A stretch of 63,429 nucleotides of DNA, the filler included, from Octopus bimaculoides (Eukaryota), in assembly GCF_001194135.2 (NCBI RefSeq). It is 5 parts of 5 records of this genome, joined end to end, with 100 filler letters (N's around TTAATTAATTAA, not from the genome) between each part and the next. Parts side by side here need not be neighbours in the genome. Positions count along the whole stretch, not along the records: positions 51,341 to 58,949 come from NC_069010.1; 4 more parts are not named here. One strand, written 5' to 3'. The position numbers were made by a program, and so were the translations under genes. Positions 908 through 58,949 of the stretch are shown in pieces (the first letter of the stretch is position 1; each line of letters starts with the position of its first letter). The notes under the pieces were generated by a model. It saw nothing but the letters and a program-made list of their open reading frames with translations. It did no database searches and was not told where the DNA came from.

Positions 908-1199
908 ATGTACATTCGTGCATATTACAAACATCTGTTTATTCTACATTTTGTAGCATTTTTCACTTGAGAAAAGACAAAAGAGATTAAATTTTATATA
1001 ATAAAACATAAATATTTTCTAAATTCTTTCTTACATTTCTGTGTCATATACTTTTTTGGCATTCACTGTATTTGAATATATTATTTTGATTTTAAGATTC
1101 AAACGATGGCTGCAAATGATGGATATTTTTATCATTTTTCATAACAAATGTACAGTCATATCTGGTTCTCTCTTTCTCTATCTATCTATCTATATGTAT

Positions 1200-51340: not shown

Positions 51341-52437
<1,097 letters not shown>

Positions 52438-52650
52438 CAGTTGTGGGGAATCATTCTCTTGAAATAATCAGTCAACTAAACACAAATCCATTCATACAGG
52501 AGAGAAATCTATAATAAATCATTCTCTCAAAATGGTAACTAAGTTATACATAAGTATATTTTTACAGGGGAGAAGCCATATCACTATGATATCTGTGATA
52601 AATCATTCCCCAAAAGATAATTGATTACACATGTAATGTATTCATACAAG
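52438..52650 (+). pseudogene. Degenerate zinc-finger repeats downstream of the ZNF-A stop
   Basis: Recognisable catacaggagagaa, aaatcattctct and ccatatcactatgatatctgtg motifs, broken by stops and deletions. Confidence 0.85.
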
Positions 52651-52682
52651 TGAGTATGCTATCATAATTTTATCTTACAAAT

Positions 52683-52688
52683 AATAAA
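52683..52688 (+). terminator. Candidate polyadenylation signal for ZNF-A
   Basis: AATAAA just after the decayed finger tail; the hexamer is common in AT-rich DNA. Confidence 0.3.
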
Positions 52689-53106
52689 ACGCAATGCATG
52701 TCCTGTTTGTGACGCTAATAGAAGAAGACTAAAACAACGAACTGAGTGGGAGTGAGTAACAGCCAGATGCTAAATGCAGACAAACTGCAGTAAAAGGTTT
52801 CGCTCTGAAGTTGCAGGTATTTTAATCGAAATAAAACTGCACCTTTTCATTGTAAATTGTATTTAGTTTATCATTTTCCCACACACACATGTAAATATAT
52901 AATAAATTAAATATTAAACTGTTTTGTTTTCGGAATTTTATTATTTCTTTTTCCACATAAAGAATAACATATTTTACAAGTTTCATCAATTCAAGAAATG
53001 TAAAAAACCATGCATGCACGCACATTCATAGACATGTATGCAGATGCATAGGTGTATATAAATATGTATGCATATATGCGTATGTATGAGTGTATGCACA
53101 CCTGTA

Positions 53107-53323
53107 TGAAGGATTGCTGAAAAATTCCTGACTTTGGTTAAAAGAAAATACAGGAGGATCAGTTAAATATGACTTTATTCACCATATTCCCCTCTCAGAT
53201 TCACACACCTATTGCAGCAGTCCTTCAGTTTTTCTAAACCCAGTAAAAGAACTCAGAAGGTTGGGCCTCCAACCAGACCTTTTGTGATACCCTTCAAGCC
53301 AGGAACTTTTCAGCACTCCCCCA
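53107..53323. mobile_element. Mariner-derived MITE (217 bp) flanked by TA/TA
   Basis: TIRs tgaaggattgctgaaaaattcctgactt / aagccaggaacttttcagcactccccca; internal minus-strand remnant CNRCVNLRGEYGE* resembles a mariner C-terminus. Confidence 0.82.
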
Positions 53324-53325
53324 TA

Positions 53326-53630
53326 CGAGGTCAGATCAATAAGTATCCGGACTGTTGCCATAGTAAAGAAGCTAAAGCACGCAGAGTAAAGCCGGTTGAA
53401 CAAACATTGACCTTGAACTCTGGCTCTACATGCGCACTAAGTTTTAATGTTCTAGCTCAGTTCGGCTGTTTACAGCAGTGCTTGGAAGGAAAGTGTGTAG
53501 CATGTGATCGTCACTTTGGCAATGACAGAGAAAGTTGCTATGGCAATACCTGTTCAGAGGCCTACGCAAAGTTGCAGAAAGTGTATAAACCGCACACAAG
53601 TGTACGAACGGTTCAGACGTTTCCAAGATC
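53326..53630 (+). mobile_element. 5' part of a second mariner element
   Basis: TA-CGAGGTCAGATCAATAAGTATCCGGACTG TIR-like start, then MTEKV / GNTCSEAYAKLQKVY / NRTQVYERFRRFQD (mariner N-terminal HTH with deletions). Confidence 0.75.
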
Positions 53631-53634
53631 TCAG

Positions 53635-54178
53635 CCAGCCCACTTAGGCGTACCTTCCTTCATTGGACACTAAACTTCATTTGCGAAGACCTGTTGAGGC
53701 AAGTGAAATCGAAATCGAGTTAAATTCGACGACTGGCACCCATGCCAACATTGTCTCCTTCATTGGACACGAAACTCAGCTTGCGAAGACTTATTGGGGC
53801 AAGCGAAAGCGAATTTGTGATGGCACCTGTGCCCAGCATCGCCTTTCTGGCACTTGTGCCCGCGGCATGTGTAAGGACTTTCGAGCGAGATCGTTGCCAG
53901 TGCCCCTGGACTGGCTCTTGTGCGGGTGGCACATAAAATACACCATTTTGAGCGTGGCCGTTGCCAGTACCGCCTGACTGGCCTTCGTGCTGGTGACACG
54001 TAAAAGCACCCACTACACTCTCTGAGTGGTTGGCATTAGGAAGGGCATCCAGCTGTAGAAACTCTGCCAAATCAGATTGGAGCCTGGTGTAGCCATCTGG
54101 TTTCACCAGTCCTCAGTCAAATCATCCAACCCATGCTAGCATGGAAAGCAGACGTTAAACGACGACGATGATGATGAC
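53635..54178 (+). mobile_element. Repeat family C, long form (retroposon with (GAT)n tail, probably RTE-dependent)
   Basis: Ends GGCATTAGGAAGGGCATCCAGCTGTAGAAACTCTGCC...CCCATGCTAGCATGGAAAGC(A/G)GACGTTAAACGA(T/C)GATG; internal ~100-bp duplication. Confidence 0.8.
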
Positions 54179-54627
54179 TACCAAGTATGACATCACCCCT
54201 TCCTTTCTCATTCATAAACACAAGAGTATTAGTATGGTAGATTATCTCGGTAACCATGGGAGCTATGGAAAAAATACAAAGCCCAGCATCACCACATCTG
54301 TGTAATTTTTAGCACAATTCCACACAGCCGTTTGACTGTGAATCCAAAGACAAGAAAGAATTGCCCATGTAAAATTTATATGTATAAATAAATGAATGAG
54401 ACAAAGAAGAGAATGGAGAAATTGACATGCAGATATTCAAATTCATATAATGAAATTCCTGTCCTACACTTGTTTCCATATCTAATTAGTTCAATTACAG
54501 AAATTAAATTAATGTAGTGTGTGCGTTGTTTAAAAAAACATTTATACATACATATATATATATATCGATATCAGTGGGAAAAAGCCTTATATATTTTGCA
54601 AGGAGATATCTTTCGCATCAAAGGTCG

Positions 54628-54686
54628 GCGATTGTCGTACGCTGAAGAAGGGAGACTACCCTGAAACTCGAGTCCGTACATATCGC
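54628..54686 (+). ncRNA. Minimal type I hammerhead ribozyme
   Basis: GCGAT-tgtc-GTACG / CTGAAGA / AGGG-agacta-CCCT / GAA / AC-tcga-GT / C / CGTAC-at-ATCGC: complete core, three helices and a GUC site (cleavage predicted 3' of 54674). Confidence 0.85.
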
Positions 54687-55017
54687 AGATCAAGATGGGA
54701 AAGATAACTTCCCTTTGCAAATATAGACAGGACACAGATGTGTGTCGATAGCCAGCTGGAGGAGATGTTCTCCTGGGGCTAAAAGCAACAGTAACATGCA
54801 CCCTTAGGGGTCAGCCACATTTAAGTGGCAAATATACTTTACTTTATAAATATATAGTTTTAGGGAAAAGAACCAAGGTTCATGAACTCATCGATGAAAA
54901 TCCACTGTCAAATATAGAAAAATTAATAATTAAAAGCACAATAAATGAGTATAATATAATACAAAGTAAATATCATAAGATTTTATTCCTAATATTATTA
55001 TTATATATATATATATA

Positions 55018-55326
55018 GGCGCAGGAGTGGCTGTGTGGTGTGTAGCTTGCTTACCAACCACATGGTTCCAGGTTCATTCCCACTGCGTGGCACCTTGGGC
55101 AAGTATCTTCTACTATAGCGTCGGGTCGACCAAAGCCTTGTGAGTGGATTTGGTAGAACGGAAACTGAAAGAAACCTGTCATATGTATGTGCTTGTCCGC
55201 CCCAACATTGCTTGACAACCGATGGTGGTGTGTTTACATCACCCGTAACTTAGCGGTTTGGCAAAAGAGACCGATAGAATAAGTACTACTAGGCTTACGA
55301 AGAATAAGTCCTGGGGTCGATTTGCT
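55018..55326 (+). mobile_element. SINE family A, 3'-truncated
   Basis: GGCGCAGGAGTGGCTGTGTGG...GAATAAGTCCTGGGGTCGATTTGCT. Confidence 0.88.
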
Positions 55327-55659
55327 GAGGAATTTAATGAAATAACTTTTGTTTGGAACCTGAAATTTTAAAAGAAGGATTTAATTTATATCAGTTTAAA
55401 ACAAGAATTTTGTTTGATAGAAGCAGAGGTAGCCAGAGGAATTGGTATCAAAAGGGTTAAATAAATAAAGACCAAACGGAATATTTCTTTTATAGAATGA
55501 CATTTGGCACTCAACCATTTATTCTTCTGTCTAAATACATACTTATGTAGTGAACTGGGTTTTTTTCTAATATGATTAGAAAGGCATCACAGGGATAAAT
55601 TTCCTTGCCTGCATGAAACATTCATTTAGTTTAGGTTTTTACCACAGAAGAGCACGGTT

Positions 55660-55850
55660 GATGCCAGTGCCAGTGGCACGTAAAAGCACCCACTACACTC
55701 TCTGAGTGGTTGGCATTAGGAAGGGCATCCAGCTGTAGAAACCTTGCCAGATCAGATTGGAGCCTGGTGCAGTCTTCTGGTCTGCCAGTCCTCAATCAAA
55801 CTGTCCAACCCATGCCAGCATGGAAAGTAGACGTTAAACGATGATGGTGA
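55660..55850 (+). mobile_element. Repeat family C, short form, adjoining the ZNF-B decayed tail
   Basis: Close match to 54000-54170. Confidence 0.85.
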
Positions 55851-55859
55851 TAATCAGTG

Positions 55860-56618
<759 letters not shown>

Positions 56619-58320
56619 TCATGTATGAGTACGTTTGTGTGTAGTTAAACTAGTATCACGAATGAATGATTTACCACAGATTTCACAGCGATAGGGCTTC
56701 TCGCTCATATGAATAAATCTGTGTCTAGTTAAATGATAATTTCTAGAGAATGATTTACCACAGATATCACAGTGATATGGTTTCTCTCCTGTATGAGTAC
56801 TTTTGTGTGCAGTTAAACTAGTATCACGAGTGAATGATTTACCACAGATTTCACAGCGATAGGGCTTCTCTCCTGTATGAATGAGTTTGTGTCTAGTTAA
56901 ATGATGATTTTCAGAGAAGGATTTACCACAGATATCACAGTGATATCGTTTCTCTCCTGTATGAATACGGTTGTGTCGAGTTAAATTAACATGACAAGAG
57001 AATGATTCACCACAGATTTCACAGCGATATGGCCTCTCTCCCATATGAATACGNNNNNNNNNNNNNNNNNNNNNNNNNNNNNNNNNNNNNNNNNNNNNNN
57101 NNNNNNNNNNNNNNNNNNNNNNNNNNNNNNNNNNNNNNNNNNNNNNNNNNNNNNNNNNNNNTAGTTAAACTAGTATCACGAATGAATGATTTACCACAGA
57201 TTTCACAGCGATAGGGCTTCTCGCTCATATGAATAAATCTGTGTCTAGTTAAATGATAATTTCTAGAGAATGATTTACCACAGATATCACAGTGATATGG
57301 TTTCTCTCCTGTATGAGTACTTTTGTGTGCAGTTAAACTAGTATCACGAGTGAATGATTTACCACAGATTTCACAGCGATAGGGCTTCTCTCCTGTATGA
57401 ATGAGTTTGTGTCTAGTTAAATGATAATTTTCAGAGAAGGATTTACCACAGATATCACAGTGATATCGTTTCTCTCCTGTATGAATACGGTTGTGTCGAG
57501 TTAAATTAACATGACAAGAGAATGATTCACCACAGATTTCACAGCGATATGGCCTCTCTCCCATATGAATACGTCTGTGTGTAGTTAAATGATTATTTTT
57601 AGAGAATGATTTACCACAGATATAACAGCGATATGGTTTCTCTCCTGTATGAGTACGTTTGTGTGCTGCTAAATTTTCATTACGAGAGAATGATTTACCA
57701 CAGATATCGCAATTATGTCGTTTCTCTCCTGTATGAACATACTTGTGTTGAGTTAAGTGATAATTGCGAAAGAACGATTTACCGCAAATTTCACAATGGT
57801 ATGGCCTCTCTCCTGTATGAGTGCGTTTGTGTCCAAGTAAGCTACCGCTTTGAGAGAATGATTGACCACAAACATCACAGCAATATGGTTTTTCACCCGT
57901 ATGAGTACGAAGGTGAACTTTTAAAGACCTCGTGTAAACGAACGACTTACCACAAATGTCACAGTCATGTAGTTTCTCTTCTAAGTGAATGGGTCTGTGT
58001 TTAGATAAAGCACTCGCACAAGAGAACGATTTACCACAGATGTTGCACTGATATGGTTTCTCGCCACCATGAATACGGCTGTGAATGGTCAAGTGGTCAT
58101 TTTGAGAAAATGATTCACCACAGATTTTGCAGTCATATGGCTCCTCTCCTGTATGTGTACATTCGTCTGTAATAAGGCTATCTTCATGAGAATTTAACTT
58201 TTTGCAGATATCACAGGGATATACGTTTCCTACATCTCCTGGCATTTCATCATGAAAATTAATCCTTTTGGATTCCATTTTACATTGAACACTGCCCTCA
58301 CATAATTCACTGCCCATCAT
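56619..58320 (-). CDS. Multi-finger C2H2 zinc-finger protein (ZNF-B); short N-terminus, one degenerate finger, then 12-17 fingers; gap at 57054-57161
   Basis: ATG at 58320 is the first after an in-frame TGA 18 codons upstream; canonical C2H2 repeats with TGEKP/MGERP linkers on both sides of the gap; TGA at 56621-56619. Confidence 0.92.
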
Positions 58321-58700: not shown

Positions 58701-58736
58701 AGAAACAGTGTAAACTAGAGAGGATACGGAAAAAGT

Positions 58737-58777
<41 letters not shown>

Positions 58778-58949
58778 CATCATCATCATCGTTTAACGTC
58801 CGCTTTCCATGCTAGCATGGGTTGGACGATTTGACTGAGGACTGGTGAAACCGGATGGCAACACCAGGCTCCAATCTAATTTGGCAGAGTTTCTACAGCT
58901 GGATGCCCTTCCTAACGCCAACCACTCAGAGAGTGTAGTGGGTGCTTTT
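58778..58949 (-). mobile_element. Repeat family C, young copy, cut by the linker
   Basis: Near-identical to the reverse complement of 54003-54170 and 59322-59490. Confidence 0.88.

What the first reader, a model, noticed from the sequence alone, without database searches (positions are those of the whole stretch)
54586..54830. Intact minimal hammerhead ribozyme at the tip of a long stem in a ~250-nt structured element between two convergent ZNF genes
Seen: complete core CTGAAGA (54642-48) and GAAA (54663-66); helix II AGGG/CCCT; a 2-bp helix III inside the perfect palindrome ACTCGAGT; GUC site at 54672-74; helix I GTACG/CGTAC extended by GCGAT/ATCGC. An outer stem closes it: TATCTTTCGCATC (54607-19) with GATGGGAAAGATA (54694-706), 12/13, then a TATATTT(T)GCAA pairing. 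Further hairpins follow: GACACA/TGTGTC, TAGCC/GGCTA enclosing AGGAGA/TCTCCT, and GCCAC/GTGGC. Established: minimal type I hammerheads with short palindromic helix III occur in Penelope-like LTRs and metazoan non-LTR retrozymes and typically cleave as dimers; A10.1-U11.1 is less favourable than G-C. Inference: this is a retrozyme-like or solo Penelope-LTR monomer. It lies sense to ZNF-A, ~2.2 kb past its stop, so it could cut read-through RNA before it overlaps ZNF-B. No ORF and no other repeat family in the window explains it.
Basis: partly seen in the sequence, partly recalled or inferred. Interest (0 to 1): 0.85.

Follow-up and report, generated by a model that had tools for sequence, protein, structure and literature searches.

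The report
Solo hammerhead-ribozyme retroelement copy
A complete type I hammerhead self-cleaving ribozyme sits at the tip of a folded ~250-base non-coding element between two zinc-finger genes; it is most likely a lone, dead-end copy of the ribozyme-carrying mobile elements (retrozymes and Penelope-like elements) already known from many animals.

Summary
Cleavage would fall between C54674 and C54675.

It is not chance. A type I hammerhead (HHR) descriptor found no match in 1.4 Gb of random sequence of this composition. A covariance model built from other hammerheads hits only 54637-54679 (25.2 bits, E 4.5e-6).

Rfam's Hammerhead_1 also matches end to end, but only at 18.3 bits against a gathering score of 34. 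The match appears only when the 66 bases alone are searched, so routine annotation would miss it.

The architecture is the canonical animal type I form, not the "minimal" Penelope form:
- helix I of 5 bp, an internal loop, then a 5-bp extension
- helix II of 4 bp with a 6-base loop
- helix III of 2 bp with the palindromic loop UCGA

Two copies are predicted to pair as a double hammerhead.

There is no second copy, no tandem array, no reverse transcriptase and no flanking LTR in the 7.6-kb piece. It is best read as a solo non-LTR retrozyme-type unit with no shown host role.

Copy number, covariation and activity could not be tested, because no collection here holds the source genome.

The parts
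54566..54832 (+). Candidate full element, about 245-267 nt with approximate ends. It is non-coding, GC 0.46, about 63-66% of bases paired, and lies between TA-rich low-complexity flanks.
   Evidence: fold, z -4.24; flanks; the 76-aa minus-strand ORF across it has no relatives; no other copy in the piece.
54628..54686 (+). Extended type I hammerhead domain: helix I extension, internal loop, helix I, core, helix II, helix III and the cleavage site.
   Evidence: sequence; the hammerhead structure evaluates at -11.0 kcal/mol against an MFE of -15.1; own model R1, 25.2 bits, E 4.5e-6 at 54637-54679; RF00163, 18.3 bits, E 0.017, model positions 1-45.
54642..54648 (+). Core strand C3 U4 G5 A6 A7 G8 A9 (CUGAAGA).
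54649..54662 (+). Helix II AGGG/CCCU (A10.1-U11.1 at its base) with the 6-nt loop 2 AGACUA.
   Evidence: present in the MFE and in all 12 lowest-energy suboptimal structures listed.
54663..54674 (+). G12 A13 A14, then helix III (A15.1-U16.1 and C-G around the loop UCGA, i.e. the palindrome ACUCGAGU), then C17. The predicted cleavage is between 54674 and 54675.
   Evidence: (two copies form an 8-bp intermolecular helix III, duplex -10.7 kcal/mol).
54637..54641 (+). Helix I, 3' strand GUACG, which pairs with CGUAC at 54675-79.
54675..54686 (+). Helix I 5' strand CGUAC, the internal-loop bases AU, and the extension AUCGC, which pairs with GCGAU at 54628-32 across the loop UGUC at 54633-36.
54590..54619 (+). 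5' arm of the outer rod (UAUAUUUUGCAA ... UAUCUUUCGCAUC).
   Evidence: (I4, I12).
54694..54726 (+). 3' arm of the outer rod (GAUGGGAAAGAUA ... UUGCAAAUAUA).
54731..54829 (+). Hairpins downstream of the rod: 54731-46, 54749-81 (with an inner stem at 54760-74), a small one at 54801-12, and 54814-29.
54543..54565 (.). (TA)n-rich 5' flank. It may be one half of a target-site duplication with 54833-55 (74% identity), but the sequence is low complexity, so this is inconclusive.
   Evidence: (D1).
54833..54855 (.). TA-rich 3' flank, the possible second half of that duplication.
   Evidence: D1.

Best explanation
This is a single ('solo') genomic copy of a short non-autonomous retroelement of the animal hammerhead class. 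That class comprises non-LTR retrozymes, which recent work derives from the terminal repeats of Penelope-like elements.

The unit is about 250 nt, has no ORF and folds into a rod with three or four side hairpins. The tip of the rod is an intact canonical type I hammerhead.

If the + strand is transcribed, the ribozyme would cut between C54674 and C54675 by the usual transesterification, leaving a 2',3'-cyclic phosphate and a 5'-OH.

Helix III is only 2 bp plus the palindromic loop UCGA. Efficient cutting should therefore need a second copy, with which it forms a double hammerhead through an 8-bp ACUCGAGU duplex and swapped helix I strands.

A lone copy has no partner in cis and only one cleavage site. 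It cannot release a unit-length RNA or a circle. This locus is therefore most likely a dead-end insertion into TA-rich intergenic DNA, with at most slow self-cleavage of any transcript that crosses it.

Shown: the motif, its non-chance status, its architecture, its solo state in this piece, the lack of coding capacity, and the predicted dimer.
Inferred: the retroelement origin, the cleavage and the lack of a host function.
For: - All core positions and the three helices are present.
- The descriptor gave 0 hits in 1.4 Gb of random sequence and 0 in 40 Mb of Markov sequence.
- Model R1, built from the RF00163 consensus plus two unrelated metagenome hammerhead families, hits only this site (25.2 bits, E 4.5e-6).
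- RF00163 is the best Rfam family and is matched over positions 1-45.
- Size, GC 0.46, high self-pairing (z -4.24) and the absence of LTR, PBS or ORF fit the definition of metazoan non-LTR retrozymes in PMC7229834.
- Solo 'monomer' retrozyme copies dispersed in intergenic DNA are described in bioRxiv 10.64898/2026.07.22.740005.
- The dimer MFE is -38.9 kcal/mol against 2 x -15.1, and it is exactly the double hammerhead.
- The internally looped helix I extension is the feature that newt type I hammerheads need for monomer activity (PMC6155905).
- 235 Hammerhead_1 hits were reported in a cephalopod genome (PMC6962438).
Against: - No other copy could be found, because none of the collections holds the source genome:
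  - the 76-aa ORF across the element has no relatives;
  - the ZNF-B N-terminus has no relatives;
  - exact protein look-ups failed;
  - element-specific DNA patterns gave 0 hits in metagenome, viral and prokaryotic genome contigs.
  Family membership therefore rests on architecture alone.
- There is no tandem arrangement here, although that is the defining state of active retrozymes.
- The Rfam score is below gathering (18.3 against 34).
- A10.1-U11.1 replaces the usual G-C at the base of helix II. All seven other distinct hammerheads in model R1's alignment have G-C.
- The target-site duplication is ambiguous.
Confidence: 0.7

Rival explanations
1. It is a solo fragment of the terminal repeat (pLTR) of an autonomous Penelope-like element, left behind by truncation or recombination, rather than a unit of a retrozyme.
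For: - Penelope-like elements carry hammerheads in their pLTRs, and most such motifs occur as single, probably truncated copies (PMC4209133).
- These elements favour microsatellite targets such as (TA)n (PMC8557442), and the element abuts a (TA)n run.
- Retrozymes and pLTRs are reported to be homologous, so the two readings overlap.
Against: - No reverse transcriptase or GIY-YIG domain was found in any of six frames of 52440-56101.
- No direct repeat containing the ribozyme flanks anything.
- The hammerhead has canonical dimensions, not those of the min-HHR.
- A tRNA-type SINE 200 nt downstream also sits next to a (TA)n run, so the TA context is not specific to Penelope-like elements.
Confidence: 0.17
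2. It is a co-opted ribozyme that cuts transcripts running on from ZNF-A before they become antisense to the convergent ZNF-B gene, acting as a terminator or insulator.
For: - It is sense to ZNF-A and lies between convergent genes.
- The core is fully intact.
- Domesticated hammerheads in 3' UTRs and introns exist in amniotes (PMC6155905).
Against: - It lies 2.2 kb past the stop, with eight poly(A) hexamers in between, the first 76 nt after the stop.
- The weak helix III predicts poor monomer cleavage.
- Solo retrozymes are found mostly in intergenic DNA by default.
- There is no expression or conservation evidence.
Confidence: 0.05
3. It is a chance match to the hammerhead consensus within a chance hairpin.
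For: Rfam gives no hit in the 7.6-kb and 291-nt searches, and the score is sub-threshold when found.
Against: - 0 descriptor hits in 1.4 Gb of random sequence.
- None of about 90 chance matches to the 18 fixed bases in metagenome DNA has helices I and II.
- Fold z-score of -4.24.
- Rfam's filters and narrow model also miss a clearly real hammerhead family.
Confidence: 0.01

Closest known systems
Metazoan non-LTR retrozymes (coral Acropora millepora, mussel Mytilus, axolotl; PMC7229834)
   Same: - Type I hammerhead with a 4-bp helix II and a 1-2 bp helix III capped by a palindromic loop.
- Unit of 170-400 nt with GC below 50%.
- No ORF, LTR, PBS or PPT.
- Strongly self-paired fold.
- Solo monomers are known (bioRxiv 10.64898/2026.07.22.740005).
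   Different: - Only one unit is present here, not a tandem array.
- No sequence similarity to any held retrozyme-like locus beyond the ribozyme core.
- A10.1-U11.1 at the base of helix II.
- Copy number and circular RNA are untested.
Rfam RF00163 Hammerhead_1 (newt satellite 2 / Schistosoma Sm-alpha type)
   Same: - Full-length alignment to model positions 1-45, with only one skipped base on each strand of helix I.
- The same helix and loop lengths.
- An internally looped helix I extension.
   Different: - Scores 18.3 bits against a gathering score of 34.
- The helix II sequence AGGG/CCCU is not matched by the model.
- Helix I has 5 bp, not 6.
Minimal hammerheads of Penelope-like element pLTRs (PMC4209133)
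   Same: - Animal retroelement context.
- Mostly single dispersed copies.
- Proposed to act as dimers.
   Different: [quoted passage not shown]
- They lie beside an RT/GIY-YIG ORF. None of this is seen here.
Hammerhead-bearing dispersed repeat in metagenomes Ga0126336/Ga0126342, and the 662-nt tandem unit of L003
   Same: - Identical GAAACUCGAGUC helix III and cleavage site.
- Type I topology.
- The Ga0126336/42 family is also missed by RF00163.
   Different: - G10.1-C11.1 at the base of helix II.
- Different helices I and II and different loops.
- The flanking sequence is unrelated.

Membership tests
Hammerhead ribozyme, type I | Conserved core: C3 U4 G5 A6 N7 G8 A9, G12 A13 A14, A15.1-U16.1, and H17 (not G). 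| tested here: met
   CUGAAGA 54642-48, GAA 54663-65, A54666-U54673, C54674.
Hammerhead ribozyme, type I | Three helices around the core, with helix I open and helices II and III capped. | tested here: met
   helix I 5 bp plus a 5-bp extension, helix II 4 bp with a 6-nt loop, helix III 2 bp with a 4-nt loop. Own model R1 scores 25.2 bits, E 4.5e-6.
Hammerhead ribozyme, type I | Reaches the Rfam RF00163 gathering score of 34 bits. | tested here: not met
   18.3 bits, E 0.017, and only when 66 nt are searched alone. No hit. Control: the same model scores L003 at 34.9 bits and misses the Ga0126336 family.
Hammerhead ribozyme, type I | Loop 1 / loop 2 tertiary contacts. | tested here: inconclusive
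   A 6-nt loop 2 (AGACUA, against the model's CAAAUA) and an internal loop UGUC/AU in helix I are in the right places. Which bases make contact cannot be judged from one sequence.
Hammerhead ribozyme, type I | Site-specific self-cleavage. | not testable with these tools
   Needs in vitro transcription.
Metazoan non-LTR retrozyme | Canonical type I hammerhead within a unit of 150-450 bp with GC below 50%. | tested here: met
   About 245-267 nt, GC 0.46.
Metazoan non-LTR retrozyme | Head-to-tail tandem repeats with at least two hammerheads. | tested here: not met
   There is one hammerhead and one copy of the unit in the 7.6-kb piece. It can therefore only be a solo/monomer derivative.
Metazoan non-LTR retrozyme | No LTR, PBS, PPT or ORF. 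| tested here: met
Metazoan non-LTR retrozyme | Highly self-paired predicted RNA. | tested here: met
   z -4.24, 0 of 200 shuffles; 63-66% of bases paired whether folded as linear or circular RNA.
Metazoan non-LTR retrozyme | Multi-copy family in the genome, expressed as linear and circular RNA. | not testable with these tools
   The source genome is not in any collection.
Penelope-like element (pLTR hammerhead) | Adjacent ORF with an RT and a GIY-YIG endonuclease. | tested here: not met
   Pfam scan of six frames of 52440-56101 found only a zinc-finger remnant.
Penelope-like element (pLTR hammerhead) | min-HHR architecture: long helix II and no helix III loop. | tested here: not met
Penelope-like element (pLTR hammerhead) | Insertion into a microsatellite, with a target duplication or tail. 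| tested here: inconclusive
   A (TA)n run lies at 54543-65, with a 74% similar TA-rich stretch at 54833-55. The sequence is low complexity, and a neighbouring SINE has the same context.
Domesticated genic hammerheads (HH9/HH10, CLEC2 type) | Conserved at an orthologous genic site (intron or 3' UTR) across species. | not testable with these tools
   No orthologous loci were obtainable. The position is intergenic, 2.2 kb past the stop and beyond eight poly(A) hexamers.

The most novel reading that the evidence does not exclude
The intact ribozyme has been kept by the host as a co-transcriptional cutter between two convergent zinc-finger genes. It would end read-through transcripts before they form antisense or double-stranded RNA with the neighbouring gene. 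That would be an invertebrate counterpart of the domesticated amniote hammerheads.
Probability: 0.05. Interest if true: 0.7.

Novelty: new member of a known kind. Interest (0 to 1): 0.3.

Why it matters
If the element belongs to a multi-copy family, it would add one more animal lineage to those that carry hammerhead retrozymes. It would also give a concrete sequence for looking for small circular RNAs in that species.

There is a practical lesson too. This clearly genuine hammerhead scores half of Rfam's threshold and is dropped by the default filters. Standard annotation therefore under-counts such motifs.

As a single locus with no sign of host function, it is otherwise an ordinary piece of mobile-element debris.

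Tried and rejected
1. Rfam on the whole piece and on 291 nt gave no hammerhead. Controls and a 66-nt search showed this was an effect of the filters and the narrow model.
2. I looked for other copies through the 76-aa minus-strand ORF that spans the element. It has no relatives.
3. I tried to identify the organism and orthologous loci through ZNF-B. The full query was swamped by vertebrate zinc-finger proteins, and the N-terminal 86 aa shared no words with anything. Exact look-ups of two window ORFs failed.
4. The element-specific DNA pattern gave 0 hits in metagenome, viral and prokaryotic genome contigs. The looser pattern gave 113 metagenome loci, of which only two unrelated hammerhead families are real, and 0 viral loci.
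5. A literature search for the sequence strings found 0 papers.
6. A tRNA-like or pol III SINE origin of the element is rejected. ARAGORN finds no tRNA, and the A-box-like and B-box-like strings I saw by eye are about 300 nt apart.
7. The direct repeats at 53987-54175 and 55667-55854 are not LTRs of this element. They are copies of a separate repeat with a (GAT)n-like tail, a third copy of the tail lies on the other strand near 58726-58803, and none contains the ribozyme.
8. A check of whether the Ga0126336 repeat is a Penelope-like element found only an RNase H-like fragment nearby. I dropped this as a side issue.

Full report
**What is there**

Written as RNA, 54628-54686 reads:

GCGAU-UGUC-GUACG-CUGAAGA-AGGG-AGACUA-CCCU-GAA-AC-UCGA-GU-C-CGUAC-AU-AUCGC

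This breaks down as follows:
- Helix I is 5 bp (54637-41 with 54675-79). It continues past a 4x2 internal loop into a further 5 bp (54628-32 with 54682-86).
- The core strand is C3-A9.
- Helix II is 4 bp with a 6-nt loop.
- G12-A14 follow.
- Helix III is A15.1-U16.1 plus C-G around the loop UCGA.
- The cleavage-site base C17 is at 54674.

This domain sits at the tip of a rod formed by two pairings: 54607-19 with 54694-706 (12 of 13 paired) and 54590-600 with 54716-26. Hairpins follow at 54731-46, 54749-81, 54801-12 and 54814-29.

RNAfold reproduces all of these stems. For 54570-54835 the energy is -88.3 kcal/mol and z is -4.24, and no dinucleotide shuffle out of 200 folds as well. Linear and circular folds of 54586-54830 are the same and pair 66% of the bases.

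**Is it chance?**

I wrote a type I descriptor: helix I of at least 5 bp, CUGANGA, helix II of at least 4 bp with a 4-8 nt loop, GAAA, helix III of at least 2 bp with a 2-6 nt loop, U16.1 and H17.
- It finds this site and nothing else on either strand of the piece.
- It finds nothing in 40 Mb of first-order Markov sequence trained on the piece.
- It finds nothing in 1.4 Gb of random sequence of the same composition.
- My hand calculation gives about 5e-10 per position, or a few chance sites per multi-gigabase genome and about 1e-5 for this piece.

Real DNA gives an empirical control. A scan of metagenome contigs for CTGANGA-N12-18-GAAACTCGAGTC returned 113 loci. Only the members of two repeated hammerhead families also had helices I and II. 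The roughly 90 other matches had essentially none. The motif is therefore a genuine hammerhead sequence by descent, not a coincidence.

**Why Rfam was silent, and what it says when pushed**

- cmscan over the 7.6-kb piece and over 291 nt reported no hammerhead even at E <= 10.
- In a control on metagenome loci, RF00163 just reaches its threshold on the L003 hammerhead (34.9 bits against 34). It does not report the obviously intact family in Ga0126336/Ga0126342 at all. The model is narrow, being built around the newt/Schistosoma sequence.
- When only 54625-54690 is given, RF00163 is the top family. It hits 54637-54679 at 18.3 bits, E 0.017, covering model positions 1-45.
- The match has the same helix and loop lengths as the consensus aUccag-CUGAcGA-GUCC-CAAAUA-GGAC-GAAACGcgCGUC-cuggAu.
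- I built model R1 from that consensus plus the two metagenome families (alignment A1). With filters off it scores the site at 25.2 bits, E 4.5e-6. The next best hit in the piece is 10.2 bits.
- Caveat: the metagenome sequences were retrieved with a pattern that fixes the 12-nt GAAACUCGAGUC, so that part of R1 is not independent of the window.

**Which kind of hammerhead**

PMC4209133 defines the canonical animal type I motif as:
- helix I of about 6 bp;
- helix II of 4 bp;
- interacting loops 1 and 2;
- helix III of 1-2 bp capped by a 2-4 nt palindromic loop.

It defines the Penelope 'min-HHR' as helix II of 7-8 bp, a short helix I with an ill-defined loop 1, and no helix III loop.

The internally looped extension of helix I is the feature reported as necessary for monomer activity of newt hammerheads (PMC6155905).

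One deviation stands out. The base of helix II is A10.1-U11.1, whereas all seven other distinct sequences in A1 have G-C. From my own knowledge, G10.1-C11.1 is the strongly preferred pair, so some loss of activity is likely. Natural retrozyme hammerheads with a weakened base of helix II do exist, for example axolotl HHR_Amex2.

**Monomer or dimer**

- As a monomer, the hammerhead secondary structure evaluates at -11.0 kcal/mol against an MFE of -15.1. Helix II, and in most cases helix I, persist in the 12 lowest-energy suboptimal structures listed.
- RNAcofold of two copies of 54628-54686 gives -38.9 kcal/mol against 2 x -15.1.
- The minimum-energy dimer is exactly the double hammerhead: both helix II hairpins are intact, ACUCGAGU forms an 8-bp intermolecular helix III, and the helix I strands are swapped between molecules.
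- This matches what is described for newt and axolotl repeats, which cleave poorly as monomers (6-22% in an hour) and well as dimers.

**Context**

- The unit occurs once. There is no second hammerhead, no similarity of the unit to anything else in the piece and no tandem repeat apart from (TA)n runs.
- Six-frame Pfam scans of 52440-56101 show no reverse transcriptase or GIY-YIG endonuclease.
- The 76-aa ORF that happens to span the element on the minus strand has no relatives.
- The direct repeats at 53987-54175 and 55667-55854 belong to a separate repeat family and do not include the ribozyme.
- The element is bounded by TA-rich low-complexity sequence: a (TA)n run at 54543-65 and a 74% similar stretch at 54833-55. 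This could be a target-site duplication in a microsatellite, the target preference reported for Penelope-like elements. However, a SINE 200 nt downstream also follows a (TA)n run, so I treat it as inconclusive.

**Interpretation**

The features fit the published definition of metazoan non-LTR retrozymes in every respect testable here except tandem arrangement. Solo monomers of such families are described as common, dispersed and mostly intergenic. They are thought to be non-mobile offspring of active arrays. The canonical architecture and the lack of any RT/EN ORF favour the retrozyme side.

With one cleavage site and no partner in cis, this copy cannot yield unit-length or circular RNA.

The suggested role in trimming ZNF-A read-through has no support. 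Eight poly(A) hexamers lie between the ZNF-A stop (52437) and the ribozyme, the first 76 nt after the stop. Four lie on the other strand between the ZNF-B stop and the element.

**What could not be done**

- The decisive test is copy number, tandem arrays and covariation in the source genome. It was impossible because the protein and contig collections do not contain this organism.
- The DNA collections are microbial or viral.
- The host was not identified. The SINE at 55019-55330 resembles, from my memory only, an abundant octopus SINE. If the guess is right, Rfam-detectable Hammerhead_1 motifs are already reported in a cephalopod genome (235 in the giant squid, PMC6962438).

**Verdict**

This is a real, intact, canonical type I hammerhead in a solo retrozyme-type unit. 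It is a new member of a well-known kind, of modest interest. Its main practical point is that standard Rfam annotation would miss it.

Noticed in passing
window 55019-55330 (+), preceded by a (TA)8 run at 55002-55017: A GC-richer block that looks like a tRNA-derived SINE (GGCGCAGGAGTGGCTG..., with the B-box-like string GGTTCCAGGTTCATTCCC). ARAGORN calls no tRNA. From memory only, it resembles an abundant octopus SINE.
   Followed up: partly
window 53987-54175 and 55667-55854 (+); tail on the minus strand near 58726-58803: Copies of another repeat ending in ...CATGGAAAGCAGACGTTAAACGA followed by (GAY)n, 86-92% identical. The region 53200-54175 also has internal direct repeats (53656/53756 and 53879/53946) and many overlapping spurious ORFs. 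The minus-strand tail gave a weak RUF21 hit.
   Followed up: partly
window 56619-57044 and about 57162-57580, either side of the 108-N gap at 57054-57161: About 420 nt of the ZNF-B coding sequence is duplicated almost exactly on both sides of an assembly gap. The 141-aa ORF repeats residues 247-386 or so of the 433-aa ORF. This looks like an assembly artefact rather than biology. A second, 10-N gap lies at 52186-52195 in ZNF-A.
   Followed up: no
window 53010-53111: A TG/TA-rich imperfect palindrome gives sub-threshold hits to mir-1277, mir-297, mir-3149 and mir-466 on both strands (best 34.6 bits against a gathering score of 81). It is low-complexity sequence, not a credible microRNA.
   Followed up: no
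window 55873-56618 (-): Degenerate 84-nt zinc-finger repeat units continue past the ZNF-B stop codon, suggesting a decayed 3' part of the finger array.
   Followed up: no
L014, L016, L021, L023, L039, L043, L050, L054, L065, L068, L075 and others (metagenomes Ga0126336 / Ga0126342): A dispersed repeat of at least 850 nt carries an intact type I hammerhead (GAGCAA-CUGAUGA-GGUUC-ACUGAA-GAACC-GAAACUCGAGUC-UUGCUU). Many copies start 56 nt upstream of the core. Rfam RF00163 does not report it; there is only a 19.6-bit HH9 hit.
   Followed up: partly
L003 (Ga0049110_10014201), hammerheads at 267-310 and 929-972 (-): Two identical hammerheads lie 662 nt apart in a perfect direct repeat (1-300 = 663-962). 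This is either a tandem retrozyme-like array or a small circular hammerhead RNA/DNA assembled as a concatemer.
   Followed up: partly
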